The position numbers and the translations under genes are program-made. A DNA stretch of 64,000 nucleotides, from positions 1 to 64,000 of the IMG/VR virus record IMGVR_UViG_3300046787_000408; one strand, given 5' to 3'. This document shows, piece by piece, positions 57,183 through 64,000 of this stretch (within the stretch, counting starts at the first letter, position 1; every line of letters starts with the position of its first letter). The notes beneath the pieces are model-generated. The model worked only from the letters and a program-made list of their open reading frames with translations, was not told the origin of the DNA and searched no databases.

Positions 57183-60100
57183 ATGGCAAGACAAAGAATT
57201 AGTGAATATGTGTTCACCCCAGGAGTTTCTGGCAGTGGTACCATCAAAGTTCCTGGCAGAATAAACCTAGAAGACTTTTTGGCCATTTATAACACAACTG
57301 ACCAGATTTCAATCTACAATTTTGGTGATACTGCACAAGGCGGATCTGTAGCCTGGGTAGCAGGAGTAACTGCGGACTTCCCTACAGCTTATGCAGGGGT
57401 AACTACTCTGAGCCTAGACTGGGATACTAGTTCTATGAATGCTAACGATAAGTTGGCTATCTATGTAGAGTCTCAAGCATTAACAGTGCAACCCTGGGCG
57501 TTTGGCATGGATGCGATTGGTCGCGAGCGAGTTTCAAATCCGCAAGCCCTAATTGACGCTGACTTTGAATATGGTTTACAAAATACCAAATGGCAAAACG
57601 TCAGTACCATCAATAACATTCCAGCGTTCTACGAAGACATTGGCGCAGATATTACGATCAACACCAATGGATACGTTAGCATGATTGCTGGTGACGATCA
57701 AATCACCAGCAACTCAGACACTGCGGTTAGATTAGAAAATCAAGGTACACCAGAATGGCATACAGCTGATTTTGCATTGATGATTAGCCAAACTCAAGGC
57801 AACGTTACTCCGTTCACCAGCAACTATCTTACTGCAAACATCAACAGTTCAGCTGAACGAACATTCACAGTAGCTAGCACCACAGGATTCACAGCTGACG
57901 ACAATATCATAATCATTGGCAATCCAGGTACAGGTGGTACCACAGTGGCTACAGCCAACATTACCAGTGTGGCTACTACCACAGTTAACGTGGCCAACGT
58001 AGCAGCCGCTGGTATCAGTGACGGCAGTTATATTATTGTAGAAACAGACACTGCAAACGTGTTTGAAGTAATGTCAGTAACCAACGTGACTGGTAATGCA
58101 CTTACTGTGGTACGACAAAGCAACCGCTCTAACGGCAGTTCGGCCAACATCACCATTGGCAACGATGTATTTGCAGTGAACAATATTGAGATTGCTAAAG
58201 TATTTGAAGTGACAGACGGTACAACCCTGCAACTCACTCGTGGTTGGTACAATATTCCAGCTGCTAACAGTTTTGTTACTGGCAGTGTAATACAAAAACT
58301 CAGTGGTAACGTTGAACTAGTTAACATGAGTGCAATCAACACAGCAGTAAACGGTACACAAACTATTGTTCGTGGCCAATTTGGAACCACAGCATTAACT
58401 GCTGCTGGTGTAGGTTCTCCTGTAATTCGCATGACTGGTATCTTTAACGCTACTGGCAACTCTGACATTCCGCAAGTGGCCGTGAATGCTACCAGTCACG
58501 GGCTAGTAGCTGGCGACTATGTCAGCGCACAAAACCAAGCCAGTACCAATGCTAGCGGAGTTAGCTATGTGTATTACTCCAACGATGACAACTTTGCGTT
58601 CTATCCTCCACGTTCAACTGGGTTAGCAGTAGGATATCCATTGAATCGTATTGACTCTATTATACGTCAGGCGTTCCAGTATACTGGTGCCGATCTTGAC
58701 GTTGTTAGTATCGCTAGCAATGGCTCTACTCCTAGTACAATTACAGTTACAACTCAGTATGCACATGGCCTAGTACCTGGTACCCCAATCATTGTGGCAC
58801 TAACATCAGGAACCAACCAAGCATATGCTACAGGTAGCTTTTTTGTTACAGAAGTGCCCAGTACTACAACATTCACTTACACTGCCAAAGCAGGTGCAGC
58901 AGTAAGCGGTAGTCTTGGTGGTACAGTGAACGTTCGTAGTAATGCGGTGTTCTTGCCAAGACCGTTTGATGGTGGTGTTATTCTTGGACCTGGTACTCCA
59001 ACTCGTGGTGCTAGTGCTGTACGTCAAACCAAGAAGTACTTTCGTTATCAATCAGGTAAGGGTATCTTGTTTACATCAGGTACCATGCTCAAGCCAACAT
59101 TTGATATTGCTAGCATCATTGCAGCTGGCACCAGTGTGGGCAGCAACATTACAGTAACTACCGATATTGAACACGGTCTCAATGCAGGTGCTGTGATTGA
59201 TCTAGCAGGTATTGTGACTTCGGGATACAATGATACCGGTTACACAGTGACCAGCATTGGAAGTGATACTGCTTTTGTAGTTGAAGCACAAAACAGTCTA
59301 GGTTCAGTAAGTCCTGAATTGGGACAACAACCACGTGTGAACGTTACCGGCTGGCACGGCTCTAGCATTCGTGCTGGTATGATGGACGATCAAAACGGTT
59401 TGTTCTGGGAACATAACGGACAAACACTCAATGTGGTGCAACGTTCTAGCACATTACAATTGGCTGGCTTTGTATCAGTCGGTGTTGGCAGTAACTTGGT
59501 TACAGGTGACGGAACATGTAGATTCCAGGATCAACTCAACAACGGTGATACTGTGGTTATTCAGGGTATGACTCACACTGTGGCCAGTGTGCTAGACAAC
59601 AACCGAATTACTGTGGTGCCTACTTTCCGTGGTGTACAGAATCAGACCAGGGTAAAAATGGCTCTGCGCAACGAGATTCGCGTGGTGCAGGAAGATTTTA
59701 ACGTGGACCAACTTGATGGTACTGGCTATAGTGGATACACTATTGATGCAAGTAAAATGCAGATGTTGGGAGTAGAATACTCATGGTACGGTGCTGGTTA
59801 TGTACAATGGATGGTTCGTGGACAAGACGGCAAGTTTGTTATGGCACATCGTTTGCCCAACAACAACCGCAACAACGAAGCATACATGCGTTCAGGTAAC
59901 TTGCCAGGACGTTATGAAGCTATCAACGATACACCAGTATCAAGCTTGGACGGTGCAATTGATGGCAGTCAAACAACTATTTCCTTGCGAGATGCTAGCC
60001 AGTATCCTGCAGCCAGCGTCACATATCCTGTGTTTGTAATGATTGACAGCGAAGTGATCAAGTACTCAGGCAAGAGTGGTAATGACCTAACTGGTTGCAC

Positions 60101-61148
60101 AAGAGCTGCTACGTTTACACAGTGGGTTGAAGGTGCTAGCCGTAGTTTTACATCTAGTTCAGCAACAAGTCACGCAGATAATACTGGCGTGATATTGATC
60201 TCAAACACTTGTACTCCACTAGTTAACCACTGGGGTAGTTCAGTTATCATGGACGGTAGCTTTGATGGCGACGAAGGTTATCAGTTTACATTCAACCGTA
60301 CCAGTTATGGTATGCCAGCTACAGTGGGTGAAAAACAAACTGTGTTTGCTATGCGTCTAAGCCCTAGCGTTAGTAATGGTATCATTGGTGACCTTGGTCA
60401 ACGCGAACTGATCAACCGTGCTCAGTTGACCTTGAGTAACATGACTGTTAACTTAACTGGTGGTCGTTTCTTGGTAGAAGGTATTTTGAACCCCAGCAAT
60501 ATTGACAGTGCTAACACAGTATGGGCAGGACTCAACAACGTCGGAGGTGGCTTCCAGCCTAGCTTTAGTCAGTTCACTACTGCACCTCGATACACTGGTG
60601 AAACCACAGGTGGTGTAACTAGTTCTTTGTTTGGCTCTGAAGGTGGTTTCTCTAAGTCAGGAACAAAAGTTACCTTCTCAGGAACCAAGAACCGTACATT
60701 CTCTGGATTGAGTTTAACCAACGTATCTAGTTCAGGTAGTTCAGCTAACGTAACAATTACACTGACTCCTACCAGCACTTTGTACAACAACAACACAGTG
60801 GCGATCAGTGTACAGAACCCAGGTACTGGTTATGCAATCGGTGACACAGTCAAGATTCTAGGAACAAGTTTGGGCGGAGCAACTCCGTTGAACGACTTGA
60901 ACATGACTGTGCAAGCGATTACTACTGAACTTACAGGTGGTGAAAGACTGTTTGCGATTCCAATCTCAACTACTAACTCAGGTGTGTTGGATTTGAGTTC
61001 AGTTAAACAGATTGGAACCAGTGCTGTACCCGGTACAGGCACATATCCTAACGGTCCAGAAGTATTGGCTATTCAGGTAACTGCGTTGAGCACAGTAACA
61101 ACACCAACTGCTGACGTGCAGTTGCAGTTCCAAGAATCTCAAGCTTGA
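57183..61148 (+). CDS. Large beta-rich virion structural/receptor-binding protein (1321 aa)
   Basis: RVSNPQALIDADFEYGLQ, RQTKKYFRYQSGKG, EYSWYGAG, YMRSGNLPGRYE; ITVTT..HGL repeats. Confidence 0.7.
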   Translation: MARQRISEYVFTPGVSGSGTIKVPGRINLEDFLAIYNTTDQISIYNFGDTAQGGSVAWVAGVTADFPTAYAGVTTLSLDWDTSSMNANDKLAIYVESQALTVQPWAFGMDAIGRERVSNPQALIDADFEYGLQNTKWQNVSTINNIPAFYEDIGADITINTNGYVSMIAGDDQITSNSDTAVRLENQGTPEWHTADFALMISQTQGNVTPFTSNYLTANINSSAERTFTVASTTGFTADDNIIIIGNPGTGGTTVATANITSVATTTVNVANVAAAGISDGSYIIVETDTANVFEVMSVTNVTGNALTVVRQSNRSNGSSANITIGNDVFAVNNIEIAKVFEVTDGTTLQLTRGWYNIPAANSFVTGSVIQKLSGNVELVNMSAINTAVNGTQTIVRGQFGTTALTAAGVGSPVIRMTGIFNATGNSDIPQVAVNATSHGLVAGDYVSAQNQASTNASGVSYVYYSNDDNFAFYPPRSTGLAVGYPLNRIDSIIRQAFQYTGADLDVVSIASNGSTPSTITVTTQYAHGLVPGTPIIVALTSGTNQAYATGSFFVTEVPSTTTFTYTAKAGAAVSGSLGGTVNVRSNAVFLPRPFDGGVILGPGTPTRGASAVRQTKKYFRYQSGKGILFTSGTMLKPTFDIASIIAAGTSVGSNITVTTDIEHGLNAGAVIDLAGIVTSGYNDTGYTVTSIGSDTAFVVEAQNSLGSVSPELGQQPRVNVTGWHGSSIRAGMMDDQNGLFWEHNGQTLNVVQRSSTLQLAGFVSVGVGSNLVTGDGTCRFQDQLNNGDTVVIQGMTHTVASVLDNNRITVVPTFRGVQNQTRVKMALRNEIRVVQEDFNVDQLDGTGYSGYTIDASKMQMLGVEYSWYGAGYVQWMVRGQDGKFVMAHRLPNNNRNNEAYMRSGNLPGRYEAINDTPVSSLDGAIDGSQTTISLRDASQYPAASVTYPVFVMIDSEVIKYSGKSGNDLTGCTRAATFTQWVEGASRSFTSSSATSHADNTGVILISNTCTPLVNHWGSSVIMDGSFDGDEGYQFTFNRTSYGMPATVGEKQTVFAMRLSPSVSNGIIGDLGQRELINRAQLTLSNMTVNLTGGRFLVEGILNPSNIDSANTVWAGLNNVGGGFQPSFSQFTTAPRYTGETTGGVTSSLFGSEGGFSKSGTKVTFSGTKNRTFSGLSLTNVSSSGSSANVTITLTPTSTLYNNNTVAISVQNPGTGYAIGDTVKILGTSLGGATPLNDLNMTVQAITTELTGGERLFAIPISTTNSGVLDLSSVKQIGTSAVPGTGTYPNGPEVLAIQVTALSTVTTPTADVQLQFQESQA

Positions 61149-61586
61149 TCAATTGCGAACAAGATCCTGTTGCACACGCAGGATCTTGTTTTGCACTGCA
61201 TCGATATTCACAGTACTCCACAACCCTGGGTGCATAGGTCTAGGCCATGTACCTTCGTCTATCCAAGCGTACCCTAGATGTTCATCGTTGAGCACAGGAG
61301 TAAATTCATCTTCTACTACACAAACAAATGTGTGATACACAAATTCGTTGTCTGACGATGTAAATTTCTCAATGGGAATTAGTCGTTGATAAACAGGAAA
61401 GCTGCCTAGTTCTTCTTGGCATTCTCGCTCCATGCCACCTAGCAAAGTCTCGCCATCTTCAATTTTTCCACCAGGTAGTCCCCAAGCTCCAGGGTGCTTG
61501 GGATCGTTGCGTAACAGATAAAGATAACGACCAGTTTGGTTGCTGCGGAACCAAACACCTACTGCTTTTACAGTACTAGATTCCAT
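61149..61586 (-). CDS. NUDIX hydrolase
   Basis: WGLPGGKIEDGETLLGGMERECQEELG Nudix box; start moved to ATG 61586, which overlaps the end of the gp15-like gene. Confidence 0.9.
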   Translation of the reverse strand: MESSTVKAVGVWFRSNQTGRYLYLLRNDPKHPGAWGLPGGKIEDGETLLGGMERECQEELGSFPVYQRLIPIEKFTSSDNEFVYHTFVCVVEDEFTPVLNDEHLGYAWIDEGTWPRPMHPGLWSTVNIDAVQNKILRVQQDLVRN

Positions 61587-62968
61587 TGCCCGCCGGGGTA
61601 AATTCCTTGATAGCTTTTTATCCATTGCTGACCTGTCCATTGATATTGTAGTGAGGTAGTTAAGTTTGTAACGTACTGATCTCCAGGTTGGGTACTGGCA
61701 ATAAACGCCACATCCCAACGTGATCCATTGAATTCGATAATGTCGTTGTAGTTAGCAACCAGTGGACGTCCGCTGGGTCCTACCCAAGCAGTTGCTGGCC
61801 CAACGTTGCCATCAGCACCAGTGGACTCAGTTAACAAATAACGCTGACCTACCACCGCAGCCGGTAAACCTTGACCAGGCCCACTTACTAGTGGATTGAT
61901 CACAGCGTCAACTGGTAACAATGTATTTTGGGGCACAGTGTCTTGATCCACACTGAGCAACAAAAAACGTTCATCATTAGGGTCAACCACAATGGTTCCA
62001 ATCACTTGTGTTCCGTCGTCTTGATCAAGCCTCAGCTGACTGATACCTGGTCTCAACACACCATACATACCTATTATAGCAGGCCACATCACGTTACTGC
62101 TAGACACAATGGAAGGAGGCACAAGACTTTGGTTGGTTTGATCCACAATAGTGCGTTCTTGTAGGGCTTGTACTTGATTTCCAATTAACACAATTTTGTA
62201 GTTGTAAGGAGTAATCACTTGACGAGTGCCCAGTAACAAGTCACTGTTAGTAATAGCGTTCACAGCATCGCCTTGTGCATCGTAGATGGATGCAATCACA
62301 CGCTCAATGACTCCTAGCTTCTTGACTTTGGCAGGACTTGAAATCCAGATAGGCAAATTGAATCGTAAGGTAGCAATGTCAATAGGGTTTTCTGTTCCCA
62401 TGGGAATAGTACGACTGCTCCACTGCACACTTTCTAGTTCTACCACACTCAAACTGGTCCAGTCAATGTAGTTGTCAGTGCTTTGTATTTCCAAACTGGG
62501 ATTGAACAAGGTTAAAATTTGTTCTAGCAACTGCATTTTTTGATTGGTGTTTGTGGTCCAAATATCCAGATTCAGAGTCAACTTGTAAGGCACAGGCATC
62601 AAACGCTCAATGCTGAATGCATTGCCTTGTGTGCGTTCAAATGTGTCTGTGGTTTCATCATATGTGCGTTGGCGTACTGCAATTTTGCTCACGTGATATG
62701 GCTCTTGCATTCTGGGACGATCATAGTCCATGGCAGCAACATAAAAAGTCATGAGTGGTGCAGCCGGCAAGCTGTTGGCAGAGTTTTCTTGAATTATGGT
62801 TTGAGCATTACGGGTAGCATCGCCATATCGCACAGGTACTCGCAACAGGGCAGCAGCATCTCCTTCTTCTTCGCGACCGTATTCAATTTGAAAATTGCTA
62901 AAGATACGAGTAAATTGCAAAAGGAATCTGCGTATTTGAGCATCGTAAAAAAATTGGGACATACTCAT
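61568..62968 (-). CDS. Tail sheath stabiliser/terminator, gp15-like, with a C-terminal extension
   Basis: FFYDAQIRRFLLQFTRIFS, VPVRYG, YDRPR, MPVPYKLTLNLDIW, LEQILTLFNP. Confidence 0.85.
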   Translation of the reverse strand: MSMSQFFYDAQIRRFLLQFTRIFSNFQIEYGREEEGDAAALLRVPVRYGDATRNAQTIIQENSANSLPAAPLMTFYVAAMDYDRPRMQEPYHVSKIAVRQRTYDETTDTFERTQGNAFSIERLMPVPYKLTLNLDIWTTNTNQKMQLLEQILTLFNPSLEIQSTDNYIDWTSLSVVELESVQWSSRTIPMGTENPIDIATLRFNLPIWISSPAKVKKLGVIERVIASIYDAQGDAVNAITNSDLLLGTRQVITPYNYKIVLIGNQVQALQERTIVDQTNQSLVPPSIVSSSNVMWPAIIGMYGVLRPGISQLRLDQDDGTQVIGTIVVDPNDERFLLLSVDQDTVPQNTLLPVDAVINPLVSGPGQGLPAAVVGQRYLLTESTGADGNVGPATAWVGPSGRPLVANYNDIIEFNGSRWDVAFIASTQPGDQYVTNLTTSLQYQWTGQQWIKSYQGIYPGGQWNLVL

Positions 62969-63525
62969 TGTTGTTTCTCCGTGTATACTCTTTTGCCATC
63001 AACTAGTTGCCAAGTTTTTCCTTTGGTCCCACTTCTTTCTAACTGCACTTGCCTTAGGCGTTCTTTTGCACTATTGGGCATATGCCACAATCCTGACACC
63101 CCTTTTCTAGGATGCGTCTTGCCTTTCATTGCGCCACCATCTCGACGAGTCCATGTATCTGTGCCACTGGCACGTCGTCGGGCATGAGCTTGTCTTTGAG
63201 ATTCTTTCATCTTTTCTTTTGATTGATCACTGTGTATCTTGTTGTTTCCGGCTTCTCTGAGATTGTAAACCTCGTTTGTTTTTCTGTATTCATCTAACCA
63301 CTGCTGTTCTTTGTTATTAAGATCGTCCAAGCAATGAGCAGAATCAATCACTTCCCATAGGAATTGGTCAATTCCGTATTTTCTCATACTGTTATAAAGA
63401 TGAGTATTTTTGCCTCCCCGAGCATCAGCCTGATGACTGTACCATCGCATCTTTGGATTTTTTTGTATGGTTTGTCCAATGTAAATCTTGTTGTTTACAA
63501 GGTTGGTTATTTTGTATATGTGCAT
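62965..63525 (-). CDS. Free-standing Seg-like GIY-YIG homing endonuclease with NUMOD3-type motif
   Basis: IYKITNLVNNKIYIGQT...RW..H, RKYGIDQF, E, YNL, HSDQSKEKMKES. Confidence 0.9.
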   Translation of the reverse strand: MHIYKITNLVNNKIYIGQTIQKNPKMRWYSHQADARGGKNTHLYNSMRKYGIDQFLWEVIDSAHCLDDLNNKEQQWLDEYRKTNEVYNLREAGNNKIHSDQSKEKMKESQRQAHARRRASGTDTWTRRDGGAMKGKTHPRKGVSGLWHMPNSAKERLRQVQLERSGTKGKTWQLVDGKRVYTEKQQ

Positions 63526-63530
63526 AAGTT

Positions 63531-63536
63531 TATTTA
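63531..63536 (-). promoter_or_regulatory. Late promoter of the Seg-like gene, inside a hairpin covering the ATG
   Basis: GCATAA-ataaac-TTATGC contains both TAAATA and the start codon. Confidence 0.65.
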
Positions 63537-63563
63537 TGCGTCATCATAAAAGAATTGCTGCAT
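63534..63563 (-). pseudogene. Orphaned original 5' end of the gp15-like gene (MQQFFYDDA*)
   Basis: ATG CAG CAA TTC TTT TAT GAT GAC GCA TAA begins 2 nt after the upstream stop and matches MSQFFYD at the current gene start. Confidence 0.8.
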
Positions 63564-63565
63564 TG

Positions 63566-64000
63566 TTAGTATCCTGGTGGGCGTGGGTTAGGCGGTAAGT
63601 TGCCACCATCATCGCCGTTGTCTGCTTGGGGGCGCAGTATTTCTGACAAGCTTTGGCGGCTGGGAATATTGCCCATGTCTGTGGTGGGCACTGTGTATGT
63701 ATTGTTTACAAAGCCCGAGCGTAATGTTTTGTTCTCTGGACCATTGTTGAGATTGGTGCGTACACGATCTTCAATCTTGATCCAACGACGACCGTCATAT
63801 CTAAACAGCCTATTGGGCTGATAGTCCAAGCGCAATGCATAATCGCCGCTGACAGGATTGGGCGGAAAACTCACACCTGGGGTTACAGGAAAGGCGTTGG
63901 GAGCCAATCCGTCACCAGTCAAATAGCCCATGGTATAACCGTCAGTTCTAGGAGTAACATTCATGCCACCCTCGGTGCCATCGGCGGTAGCAGTACCTAC
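63566..64000 (-). CDS. Neck protein (gp14-like by position), C-terminal part; 5' end beyond the right edge
   Basis: Frame open to the window edge; GVSFPPNPVSGDYALRLDYQPNRLFRYDGRRW; upstream of gp15-like. Confidence 0.6.
   Translation of the reverse strand, partial: VGTATADGTEGGMNVTPRTDGYTMGYLTGDGLAPNAFPVTPGVSFPPNPVSGDYALRLDYQPNRLFRYDGRRWIKIEDRVRTNLNNGPENKTLRSGFVNNTYTVPTTDMGNIPSRQSLSEILRPQADNGDDGGNLPPNPRPPGY

What the first reader, a model, noticed from the sequence alone, without database searches (positions are those of the whole stretch)
62940..63565. Homing endonuclease inserted into the start of gp15-like, supplying a replacement N-terminus
Seen: 2 nt after the gp14-like stop is a mini-ORF MQQFFYDDA* (63563-63534). 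The Seg-like gene follows, and its stop overlaps (ATGA) a new start MSMSQFFYDAQIRR with a GGAG RBS inside the endonuclease's last codons. The duplicated QFFYD uses different codons (CAA TTC TTT TAT GAT versus CAA TTT TTT TAC GAT). Inference: the element invaded about codon 8 of an essential gene without an intron or intein and repaired it with a recoded, cleavage-resistant 5' end. The insertion site can be read directly from the sequence.
Basis: partly seen in the sequence, partly recalled or inferred. Interest (0 to 1): 0.62.

Follow-up and report, generated by a model that had tools for sequence, protein, structure and literature searches.

The report
Homing endonuclease carrying replacement gene start
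A selfish endonuclease gene sits inside the first ten codons of an essential phage tail gene and keeps that gene whole by bringing its own ribosome site, start codon and a second copy of the first codons; about 190 related phage sequences show it being gained, moved and lost at this one site.

Summary
Three endonuclease-free relatives, 94-95% identical in the tail protein, read straight through as MQQFFYDEQIRR, starting 2 nt after the upstream stop.

The inserted gene is an intact free-standing GIY-YIG homing endonuclease with an I-TevI-like catalytic domain. All 32 homologues found in IMG/VR lie at this same junction. In 20 of 34 unique endonuclease-bearing alleles the displaced start of the tail gene survives as a short remnant.

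Endonuclease and tail-gene trees conflict (AU p 1e-4 to 5e-7), so the cassette moves between alleles. Some endonuclease-free alleles still carry its last codons as deletion scars. Many of these appear to start the tail gene at AUU or AUC.

Two parts of the reading are not supported. The synonymous "recoding" is ordinary polymorphism. The MSMSQFFYDAQ start also occurs without the endonuclease. Only an Ala codon after YD tracks one endonuclease type. Cleavage resistance and the cut site are untested.

The closest precedent is the fungal mitochondrial mobile ORF that carries a replacement gene end, here mirrored to the 5' end in a phage. I rate it a new variant of a known kind, of moderate interest.

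The parts
63566..64000 (-). 3' end of the upstream virion structural gene (458 aa in the full record). Its stop is TAA at 63568-63566. Its last codons hold the AGGA that serves the native start of the tail gene.
   Evidence: It matches PHROG 11591 (6e-82) and no Pfam family. Homology to T4 gp14 was not shown.
63534..63563 (-). Remnant of the native 5' end of the tail gene. It is a 9-codon mini-ORF, MQQFFYDDA*, at the native start position.
   Evidence: Endonuclease-free relatives carry ATG CAG CAA TTT TTT TAT GAC GAG CAG at the same place. The same remnant is seen in 20 of 34 unique endonuclease-bearing alleles.
63543..63557 (-). Left copy of the direct repeat (codons 3-7 of the native gene).
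   Evidence: only two matches in the window, with 0.01 expected.
63526..63533 (-). 8-nt spacer between the remnant's stop and the endonuclease ATG. It has no Shine-Dalgarno sequence. The block CATAAATAAACnT is conserved among remnant-bearing loci.
62965..63525 (-). Free-standing GIY-YIG homing endonuclease gene, 186 aa, intact.
   Evidence: Pfam PF01541 at 5e-9 and PHROG 314 at 1e-25. I-TevI catalytic domain by sequence, with the R27, E75 and N90 equivalents kept, and by fold, TM 0.70. dN/dS is about 0.12.
62977..62980 (-). GGAG ribosome-binding site for the tail gene, lying inside the endonuclease's last codons.
   Evidence: A GGAG or AGAG sits at the same place in most endonuclease-bearing relatives.
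62942..62956 (-). Right copy of the direct repeat, inside the functional tail gene.
61568..62968 (-). Tail sheath stabiliser / completion gene (T4 gp15 type), 466 aa. Its ATG overlaps the endonuclease TGA as ATGA.
   Evidence: Pfam PF16724 at 2.6e-28, residues 7-235 matching profile positions 2-213. PHROG 11196 at 1.6e-88. The homologue in phage PA5oct is a virion protein by mass spectrometry according to that record's annotation.

Best explanation
A free-standing GIY-YIG homing endonuclease gene occupies the 5' end of the essential tail sheath-stabiliser gene.

The mobile unit has four parts:
- a decayed piece of codons 7-10 that ends in a stop;
- the endonuclease ORF;
- a Shine-Dalgarno sequence inside the ORF's last codons;
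- a start codon plus a fresh copy of the first codons of the tail gene.

On insertion, the resident ribosome site, ATG and first six or more codons are left behind as a dead mini-ORF. The tail gene is then read from the cassette's start, so no intron, intein or gene splitting is needed.

Inferred steps: the enzyme cuts endonuclease-free alleles in the very conserved TTT TTT TAY GAY ... CAR ATA CGN stretch. Repair then copies the cassette from an occupied genome during co-infection. The remnant serves as the left homology arm right up to the break, and the tail gene serves as the right arm.

The endonuclease itself is probably translated at a low level. This would happen by coupling to the upstream gene, or by re-initiation 8 nt after the mini-ORF's stop.

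The element is later lost by deletion. The scars it leaves keep its last codons and often an AUU or AUC start for the tail gene. Such alleles can be invaded again.
For: Shown directly.

- The native contiguous start is present in endonuclease-free relatives at 94-95% protein identity. It is also present in about 100 further native alleles.
- All 32 endonuclease homologues found in IMG/VR lie between the same two genes.
- Remnants occur in 20 of 34 unique occupied alleles. The other 14 have the endonuclease ATG at or beside the upstream stop.
- The catalytic residues are intact, the fold is I-TevI-like, and dN/dS is 0.12.
- Presence of the endonuclease needs at least 23 changes on a 143-row gp15 tree. 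Closely related gp15 backgrounds (branch lengths 0.02-0.07) differ in state, for example L156 / L093 / L068 and L130 / L038 / L132.
- The endonuclease and flanking genes have decoupled histories. Identity correlates at r = 0.33, against 0.74 between the two flanks. L087 and L094 are 95% identical in the endonuclease but 67% in gp15.
- AU tests reject each gene's clades on the other gene's data, with p from 5e-7 to 1.7e-4.
- Between occupied pairs, nucleotide identity jumps from 55-75% to 83-100%. The jump starts inside the remnant.
- The same cassette left end, GGTGAGCCATAAATAAACG, is joined to two different kinds of resident start: the ATG type in L023 and L096, and the ATT type in L087-89 and L183.
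- Scars exist. L068 keeps the remnant start plus the endonuclease tail. L070 keeps 21 of 22 nt of the 3' end of the L072 endonuclease, including its stop. L145, L177 and L078 are further scars.
- The proposed target is the most conserved nucleotide block of native alleles.
Against: - No cleavage, expression or homing experiment exists, so the cut site and the immunity mechanism are inferred.
- The window's endonuclease is saturated at synonymous sites against nearly all sampled homologues. Its nearest endonuclease-free relative is only 86% identical in DNA, with no distinct co-conversion tract. Gain in this lineage therefore cannot be told from loss in the sister lineage.
- The AU-test groups were chosen after the trees had been seen.
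- Five remnants lack a start codon, so the mini-ORF is not required for endonuclease expression.
- No reads could be examined.
Confidence: 0.8

Rival explanations
1. The endonuclease sits in a group I intron, or is an intein. The mini-ORF would be a short first exon that is joined to the body of the gene.
For: Short unannotated first exons next to endonuclease genes are known. One example is the ICP1 terminase (PMC10448857). The mini-ORF sits exactly at the native start.
Against: - No Rfam intron model matches, even at E up to 10.
- Only 8 nt before the endonuclease ORF are non-coding and none after it, which leaves no room for a ribozyme core.
- The mini-ORF ends in a stop and lies in a different frame from the endonuclease.
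- The downstream ORF repeats codons 3-8 and has its own GGAG and ATG.
- Fourteen occupied alleles have no remnant, and five remnants have no start codon, yet the gene is complete in all of them.
- There is no Hint domain.
Confidence: 0.03
2. The arrangement is an old vertical inheritance. The cassette entered once, no longer moves, and its patchy distribution comes only from repeated deletion.
For: - Deletion scars are real.
- The window's endonuclease is very diverged from the others at synonymous sites.
- The left cassette end is homologous in all remnant-bearing loci, which fits a single origin.
Against: - The endonuclease and gp15 trees are incongruent under AU tests.
- Endonuclease identity far exceeds flank identity in many pairs and falls far below it in others.
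- The same cassette end is joined to ATG-type and to ATT-type resident starts.
- Strong purifying selection on the endonuclease is hard to explain for an immobile selfish gene.
Confidence: 0.1
3. The repeat is a chance similarity, or a local tandem duplication unrelated to the endonuclease, which later landed between the two copies.
For: The repeat is short, 15-16 nt with two mismatches.
Against: - The pattern occurs twice in 64 kb against 0.01 expected.
- The left copy sits at the native start with the native spacer.
- Among about 119 unique endonuclease-free alleles, only L068 has the duplication, and it also keeps the endonuclease's last codons.
Confidence: 0.02
4. The remnant mini-ORF is kept by selection as a leader ORF that delivers ribosomes to the endonuclease start. 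It would not be a neutral leftover that is refreshed at each homing event.
For: - In 12 loci the peptide begins MQQFFY (MTQQFFY in L098), and the changes seen in those codons are synonymous.
- The stop lies 7-8 nt before the endonuclease ATG.
- No Shine-Dalgarno sequence precedes that ATG.
- Coupling of free-standing endonucleases to upstream ORFs is described for T4 (PMC2988022).
Against: - Five remnants have lost the start.
- Three remnants are of the ATT type.
- Synonymous-only change is equally expected if each remnant is the recipient's own, recently functional, sequence.
- A candidate hairpin over the endonuclease AUG is not significant, z = -1.2.
Confidence: 0.3

Closest known systems
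Fungal mitochondrial mobile endonuclease ORFs that carry a replacement gene end (Allomyces macrogynus atp6; Glomus atp6, atp9, cox2, nad3; Rhizopus atp9; Mortierella cox2), as described in PMC3630166
   Same: - An endonuclease ORF is inserted within a coding sequence near one end.
- The element carries its own copy of that end, which becomes the expressed one.
- The displaced native end persists beside it as a duplicate.
- That duplicate resembles the endonuclease-free relatives.
- The element moves between lineages.
   Different: - There it is the 3' end of the gene; here it is the 5' end, so the element must also supply a ribosome site and start codon.
- Those are organelle genomes with mostly LAGLIDADG enzymes, often fused in frame to the host gene. 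Here the host is a phage, the enzyme is GIY-YIG, and the ORF is separate.
- The duplicated stretch is far shorter here, about 6-10 codons.
Free-standing Seg (GIY-YIG) and Mob (HNH) homing endonucleases of T4-like phages (PMC2988022)
   Same: - A free-standing ORF lies between or next to essential genes.
- It is present or absent among relatives at a fixed site.
- Its start overlaps or is coupled to the upstream ORF.
- Expression signals for the downstream essential gene are embedded in the endonuclease ORF, which favours its retention.
   Different: The T4 examples are intergenic, with the cut at a distance inside a neighbouring gene. That review mentions no duplicated gene end (the word stem 'duplicat' does not occur in it). 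Direct homology to any named Seg protein was not tested here.
Genes split by endonuclease insertion: Aeh1 nrdA/mobE, T4 genes 39/60 with mobA, phage 25 gene 43 (PMC2988022)
   Same: An endonuclease gene lies inside a coding region without an intron or intein.
   Different: There the two halves are complementary polypeptides that reassemble. Here the downstream ORF is complete, and the upstream piece is a redundant 9-codon remnant.
I-TevI (td intron endonuclease of T4)
   Same: The catalytic domain matches by sequence (E 7e-4) and by fold (TM 0.70). The R27, E75 and N90 equivalents are kept, and the catalytic domain is followed by a separate C-terminal region.
   Different: The window's gene is not intron-encoded. 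Its C-terminal region matches no known DNA-binding domain. Identity is about 28%.

Membership tests
Free-standing GIY-YIG homing endonuclease | GIY-YIG catalytic domain with the catalytic Arg, Glu and Asn | tested here: met
   PF01541 at 5e-9. Alignment to I-TevI 1mk0/1ln0 keeps the R27, E75 and N90 equivalents. Foldseek gives TM 0.70 to 1ln0.
Free-standing GIY-YIG homing endonuclease | Own ORF, not embedded in an intron or intein | tested here: met
   The ORF has its own ATG and TGA and lies in a different frame from both neighbours. No intron model matches. No Hint domain is present.
Free-standing GIY-YIG homing endonuclease | Present or absent at one fixed site among otherwise collinear relatives | tested here: met
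   All 32 of 32 homologues lie at the same junction. In the two gp15-based samples the endonuclease is present in 5 of 80 and in 9 of about 75 alleles.
Free-standing GIY-YIG homing endonuclease | History independent of the flanking genes (horizontal spread) | tested here: met
   One caveat applies: the AU-test groups were named after the trees had been seen.
Free-standing GIY-YIG homing endonuclease | Site-specific cleavage of the endonuclease-free allele, and immunity of the occupied allele | not testable with these tools
   This needs enzyme assays.
Free-standing GIY-YIG homing endonuclease | Separate DNA-binding domain | tested here: inconclusive
   Residues 100-186 are conserved and basic. 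They are predicted as helices plus a beta hairpin, with pLDDT 45-83. No Pfam or PDB match was found. The C-termini are modular across the family.
Group I intron-encoded endonuclease | Ribozyme core flanking the ORF, and exons that join to give the full protein | tested here: not met
   One search gave no match. Only 8 nt are non-coding. The downstream ORF is complete in itself.
Endonuclease-split gene (genes in pieces) | Two complementary, non-redundant coding pieces | tested here: not met
   The pieces overlap (codons 3-8 are duplicated). The downstream ORF covers Pfam profile positions 2-213 starting at its residue 7.
Endonuclease element with terminal gene replacement (mitochondrial mORF type) | The element carries a copy of the gene end that becomes the functional one. 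The native end stays as a displaced duplicate resembling endonuclease-free relatives. | tested here: met
   The arrangement is mirrored to the 5' end. Expression of the new end was not tested.
T4 gp15-type tail sheath stabiliser | Match to the family profile over its curated threshold | tested here: met
   PF16724 scores 99.3 bits against a cut-off of 25.

The most novel reading that the evidence does not exclude
This would be a distinct insertion strategy for phage homing endonucleases: terminal replacement at the 5' end. The cassette would be a self-contained unit that can live inside the most conserved codons of an essential gene. The displaced start would double as a homology arm reaching the break, and as a leader ORF for the endonuclease. 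Repeated gain and loss would then drive variation in the N-terminus and start codon (AUG, AUU, AUC) of an essential tail protein. An Ala-for-Glu change at the codon after YD would be the immunity mutation carried by one endonuclease type.
Probability: 0.3. Interest if true: 0.7.

Novelty: new variant of a known kind. Interest (0 to 1): 0.55.

Why it matters
Homing endonucleases are usually said to survive inside genes only by hiding in introns or inteins, or by splitting the gene. This locus shows a third route in a phage: the element brings a replacement start for the host gene.

Because about 150 distinct natural alleles are available, every stage of the homing cycle is visible as sequence:
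- empty site;
- occupied with remnant;
- occupied without remnant;
- truncated endonuclease;
- deletion scar;
- re-invaded scar.

This gives a ready natural data set for mapping a GIY-YIG target, its immunity changes and its co-conversion tracts. It also shows how a selfish gene can leave lasting marks on an essential structural gene, namely new N-termini and probable AUU or AUC starts.

For annotation there are two practical warnings. The 9-codon ORF is a pseudogene fragment. Tail-gene starts in this phage group should not be forced to ATG.

Tried and rejected
- blastn of the region against 50,697 phage records found nothing. Only distant protein relatives exist among isolates: Atu_ph07, Phosso and PA5oct at about 35%.
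- A hairpin (GCATAA / TTATGC) that could hide the endonuclease AUG is not better than shuffles, z = -1.2. It is not kept in relatives.
- Promoter-like and terminator-like sites are at chance level.
- I looked for a divergent co-conversion tract next to the endonuclease by comparing the window with L007. Identity is about 86% on both sides, with no local drop.
- Synonymous 'recoding' as immunity was rejected, because the same variants are common in native alleles.
- Foldseek found no match for the C-terminal half of the endonuclease.
- 'gp14-like' for the upstream gene could not be confirmed.
- Automatic calling of the gp15 start in occupied loci was unreliable, because the gp15 frame stays open into the endonuclease's 3' end. 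Start types were therefore read from the junction sequences themselves.
Full report
**Observation.** All features are on the minus strand.
- The upstream gene ends with TAA at 63568-63566.
- Two bases later a 9-codon ORF, MQQFFYDDA*, runs 63563-63534.
- Eight bases after its stop a 186-aa ORF runs 63525-62965.
- Its TGA overlaps the ATG (62968) of a 466-aa ORF that starts MSMSQFFYDAQIRR.
- GGAG lies 8 nt upstream of that ATG, inside the last codons of the 186-aa ORF.

The degenerate pattern for Q-F-F-Y-D occurs only at these two places in the 64-kb window. The expected number is 0.01, and no shuffle in 100 reached two.

**The genes.**
- The 186-aa protein has a GIY-YIG domain (PF01541, 5e-9) and matches phage homing-endonuclease PHROGs.
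- Its first 92 residues align to the I-TevI catalytic domain, with the Arg27, Glu75 and Asn90 equivalents kept.
- An AlphaFold model (pLDDT 74) has that domain as its best PDB match, with TM 0.70 normalised by the target.
- The 466-aa protein is a T4 gp15-type tail sheath stabiliser (PF16724, 2.6e-28). The profile match begins at residue 7, so the FFYD motif lies at the conserved N-terminus.
- The upstream gene is a virion structural protein of PHROG 11591. Its likeness to gp14 was not confirmed.
- The record is a 300-kb phage contig. The nearest isolates are jumbo phages Atu_ph07, Phosso and PA5oct, at about 35% identity.

- Scans of IMG/VR and JGI metagenomes gave 160 loci encoding relatives of the tail protein.
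- The closest relatives, L006, L007, L008 and L118, are 94-95% identical in protein and lack the endonuclease.
- In them the upstream stop is followed by the same CA spacer and then ATG CAG CAA TTT TTT TAT GAC GAG CAG ATA CGC. This reads MQQFFYDEQIRR, running straight into the body of the gene.
- About 100 further unique alleles have the same native layout. The start lies from 1 nt of overlap to about 11 nt after the upstream stop, and the N-terminus is M(x)QFFYD[E/A]QIRRF.
- The mini-ORF in the window is therefore the displaced native start of the tail gene.

**A site-specific family.**
- Searching with the endonuclease gave 32 loci, and every one lies between the same two genes.
- After removing duplicates there are 154 unique junctions:
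  - 104 native;
  - 20 occupied with a remnant;
  - 14 occupied without a remnant, where the endonuclease ATG overlaps or abuts the upstream stop;
  - 9 endonuclease-free with an odd start region;
  - 5 clear scars;
  - 1 endonuclease fragment;
  - 1 with an unrelated 1.2-kb insert.
- Remnant-bearing loci share a homologous left end: the resident start, TTY TTT TAY, a variable triplet, then GAS SCA TAA ATAAAC and the endonuclease ATG 7-8 nt on.
- That conserved end resembles native codons 7-10. GAC GCA TAA ATA matches GAC GAA CAA ATA at 10 of 12 positions.
- The remnant may therefore reach codon 10, and its stop may be a mutated Gln codon. This is my reading and was not tested statistically.

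**Mobility.**
- Endonuclease presence needs at least 23 changes on a 143-row gp15 tree.
- Closely related gp15 backgrounds (branch lengths 0.02-0.07 on that tree) differ in state. Examples are L156 native, L093 occupied and L068 scar, and L130 native, L038 occupied and L132 odd start.
- Endonuclease identity is decoupled from flank identity. The correlation is r = 0.33, against 0.74 between the two flanking genes. L087 and L094 are 95% identical in the endonuclease and 67% in gp15. L150 and L161 are 51% and 84%.
- AU tests reject each gene's well-supported clades on the other gene's data, with p from 5e-7 to 1.7e-4. The groups were chosen after the trees had been seen.
- Between occupied pairs, DNA identity rises from 55-75% in the upstream gene to 83-100%. 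The rise starts inside the remnant and extends through the first 450 nt or so of the endonuclease.
- One cassette left end is joined to ATG-type resident starts in L023 and L096. It is joined to ATT-type resident starts in L087-89 and L183, with the switch right after TAT.
- The endonuclease is under purifying selection, with median dN/dS 0.12 over 28 pairs.

**Loss and re-invasion.**
- L068 keeps the first 12 nt of the remnant, then the last codons and stop of an endonuclease, then the cassette-type start. The body of the endonuclease is gone.
- L070 has no endonuclease, yet the 22 nt before its start match the 3' end of the L072 endonuclease at 21 positions, stop codon included.
- L145, L177 and L078 keep other endonuclease tails.
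- L117 and L178 keep only 27-45 codons.
- Nine endonuclease-free alleles have GGAGAA, five bases, then ATT, with no in-frame ATG, GTG or TTG before FFYD.
- The same GGAGAA..TAAAATT is the tail of the endonuclease in 13 occupied alleles.
- These alleles are scattered on the gp15 tree. They occur as remnants to the left of endonucleases in L087-89 and L183. So they were formed by loss and then invaded again.

**What is not supported.**
- The synonymous differences between the two copies (TTC/TTT, TAT/TAC) are polymorphisms seen in 28-33% of native alleles.
- The MSMSQFFYDAQ start occurs without an endonuclease in L123 and with other endonucleases in L023 and L092.
- One difference does track the cassette. 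Of 12 remnant-bearing loci with the 186-aa-type endonuclease, 11 have Ala after YD in the functional copy. Among native alleles the figure is 16 of 104 (Fisher p 1.7e-7, not corrected for relatedness). This could be hitch-hiking or immunity.
- The window differs from its nearest empty-site relative by 14% in DNA on both sides, with no local tract. Recent gain cannot be told from loss in the sister lineage.

**Excluded readings.**
- No intron model matches, and there is no room for one.
- The endonuclease is in another frame and has its own stop, so it is not an intein.
- The downstream ORF is complete, so this is not a split gene.

**Proposed mechanism.** Every step here is inferred.
- The enzyme cuts empty alleles in the TTT TTT TAY GAY..CAR ATA CGN block, which is the most conserved stretch of native alleles even at third positions.
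- Repair copies the cassette from an occupied co-infecting genome.
- The remnant supplies homology up to the break on the left, and the gene body supplies it on the right.
- The resident start is left as a dead mini-ORF, and the tail gene is read from the cassette's ribosome site and start.
- The endonuclease is probably made at a low level, by coupling to the upstream ORF or by re-initiation after the mini-ORF. T4 Mob and Seg genes are discussed in these terms in PMC2988022.

**Comparison with known systems.**
- The nearest described system is the fungal mitochondrial mobile ORF. It carries a foreign C-terminal gene end and leaves the native one as a displaced duplicate (PMC3630166, citing the Allomyces atp6 case).
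- The phage locus is its mirror image at the 5' end, which additionally requires a ribosome site and start codon.
- The T4 review lists intergenic Seg and Mob genes and three split genes, but no duplicated gene end.
- Four literature searches found no description of this arrangement in phages. That is not proof of absence.

**Limits.** There are no reads, no RNA and no biochemistry. The loci come from metagenome contigs of unknown hosts. The samples were partly selected with the endonuclease as the query, so frequencies should be taken only from the gp15-based scans: 5 of 80 and 9 of about 75.

Noticed in passing
L014, L020, L022, L032, L033, L036, L070, L132, L133 (endonuclease-free); L038, L072, L087, L088, L093, L098, L099, L101, L102, L103, L161 (occupied); ATC in L150, L152, L058, L160: The essential tail gene has no in-frame ATG, GTG or TTG before the conserved FFYD motif. 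A conserved ATT (or ATC) sits 7 nt after GGAG, usually 1 nt after the endonuclease's TAA. These are probably AUU or AUC starts, which are rare in bacteria and phages.
   Followed up: partly
L082:1825-3007 (same as L167): At the same junction, in place of the endonuclease, there is a 1.2-kb insert. It encodes a heme oxygenase (PF01126, 1e-15) and a ferredoxin-dependent bilin reductase (PF05996, 1.6e-13). The junction is therefore a general insertion hot spot for accessory genes.
   Followed up: partly
L023-L183 endonuclease ORFs: The endonuclease family keeps one catalytic domain but has at least five different C-terminal ends (186, 172, 156, 165 and about 189 aa types, one of them Cys-rich). 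L092 combines a window-like N-terminus with an L023-like C-terminus. This suggests domain shuffling within the family.
   Followed up: partly
window 61149-61718 (-): A NUDIX hydrolase ORF lies downstream of the tail gene. As listed, it overlaps the tail gene's 3' end by about 150 nt, so its true start is probably a later codon. The same gene order (tail sheath stabiliser, then MutT/NUDIX) is annotated in Pseudomonas phage PA5oct.
   Followed up: no
window 57183-61148 (+): A 1321-aa ORF lies on the opposite strand, convergent with the NUDIX and tail genes. Its composition is Thr/Ser/Gly-rich and fibre-like. It was not analysed.
   Followed up: no
native alleles, e.g. L049, L053, L056, L057, L059: The stretch before FFYD varies from 2 to about 12 residues among native alleles (MQQ.. 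up to MATEPSNTNPF..). The extreme N-terminus evidently tolerates replacement, which may be what allows the cassette's own start to work.
   Followed up: no
G000:C1:274629-274892 (+), locus L199: This is the only other GIY-YIG-like match in the 300-kb record. It is weak (14.9 bits, below the cut-off). The endonuclease studied here is thus the only clear GIY-YIG gene in the genome.
   Followed up: no
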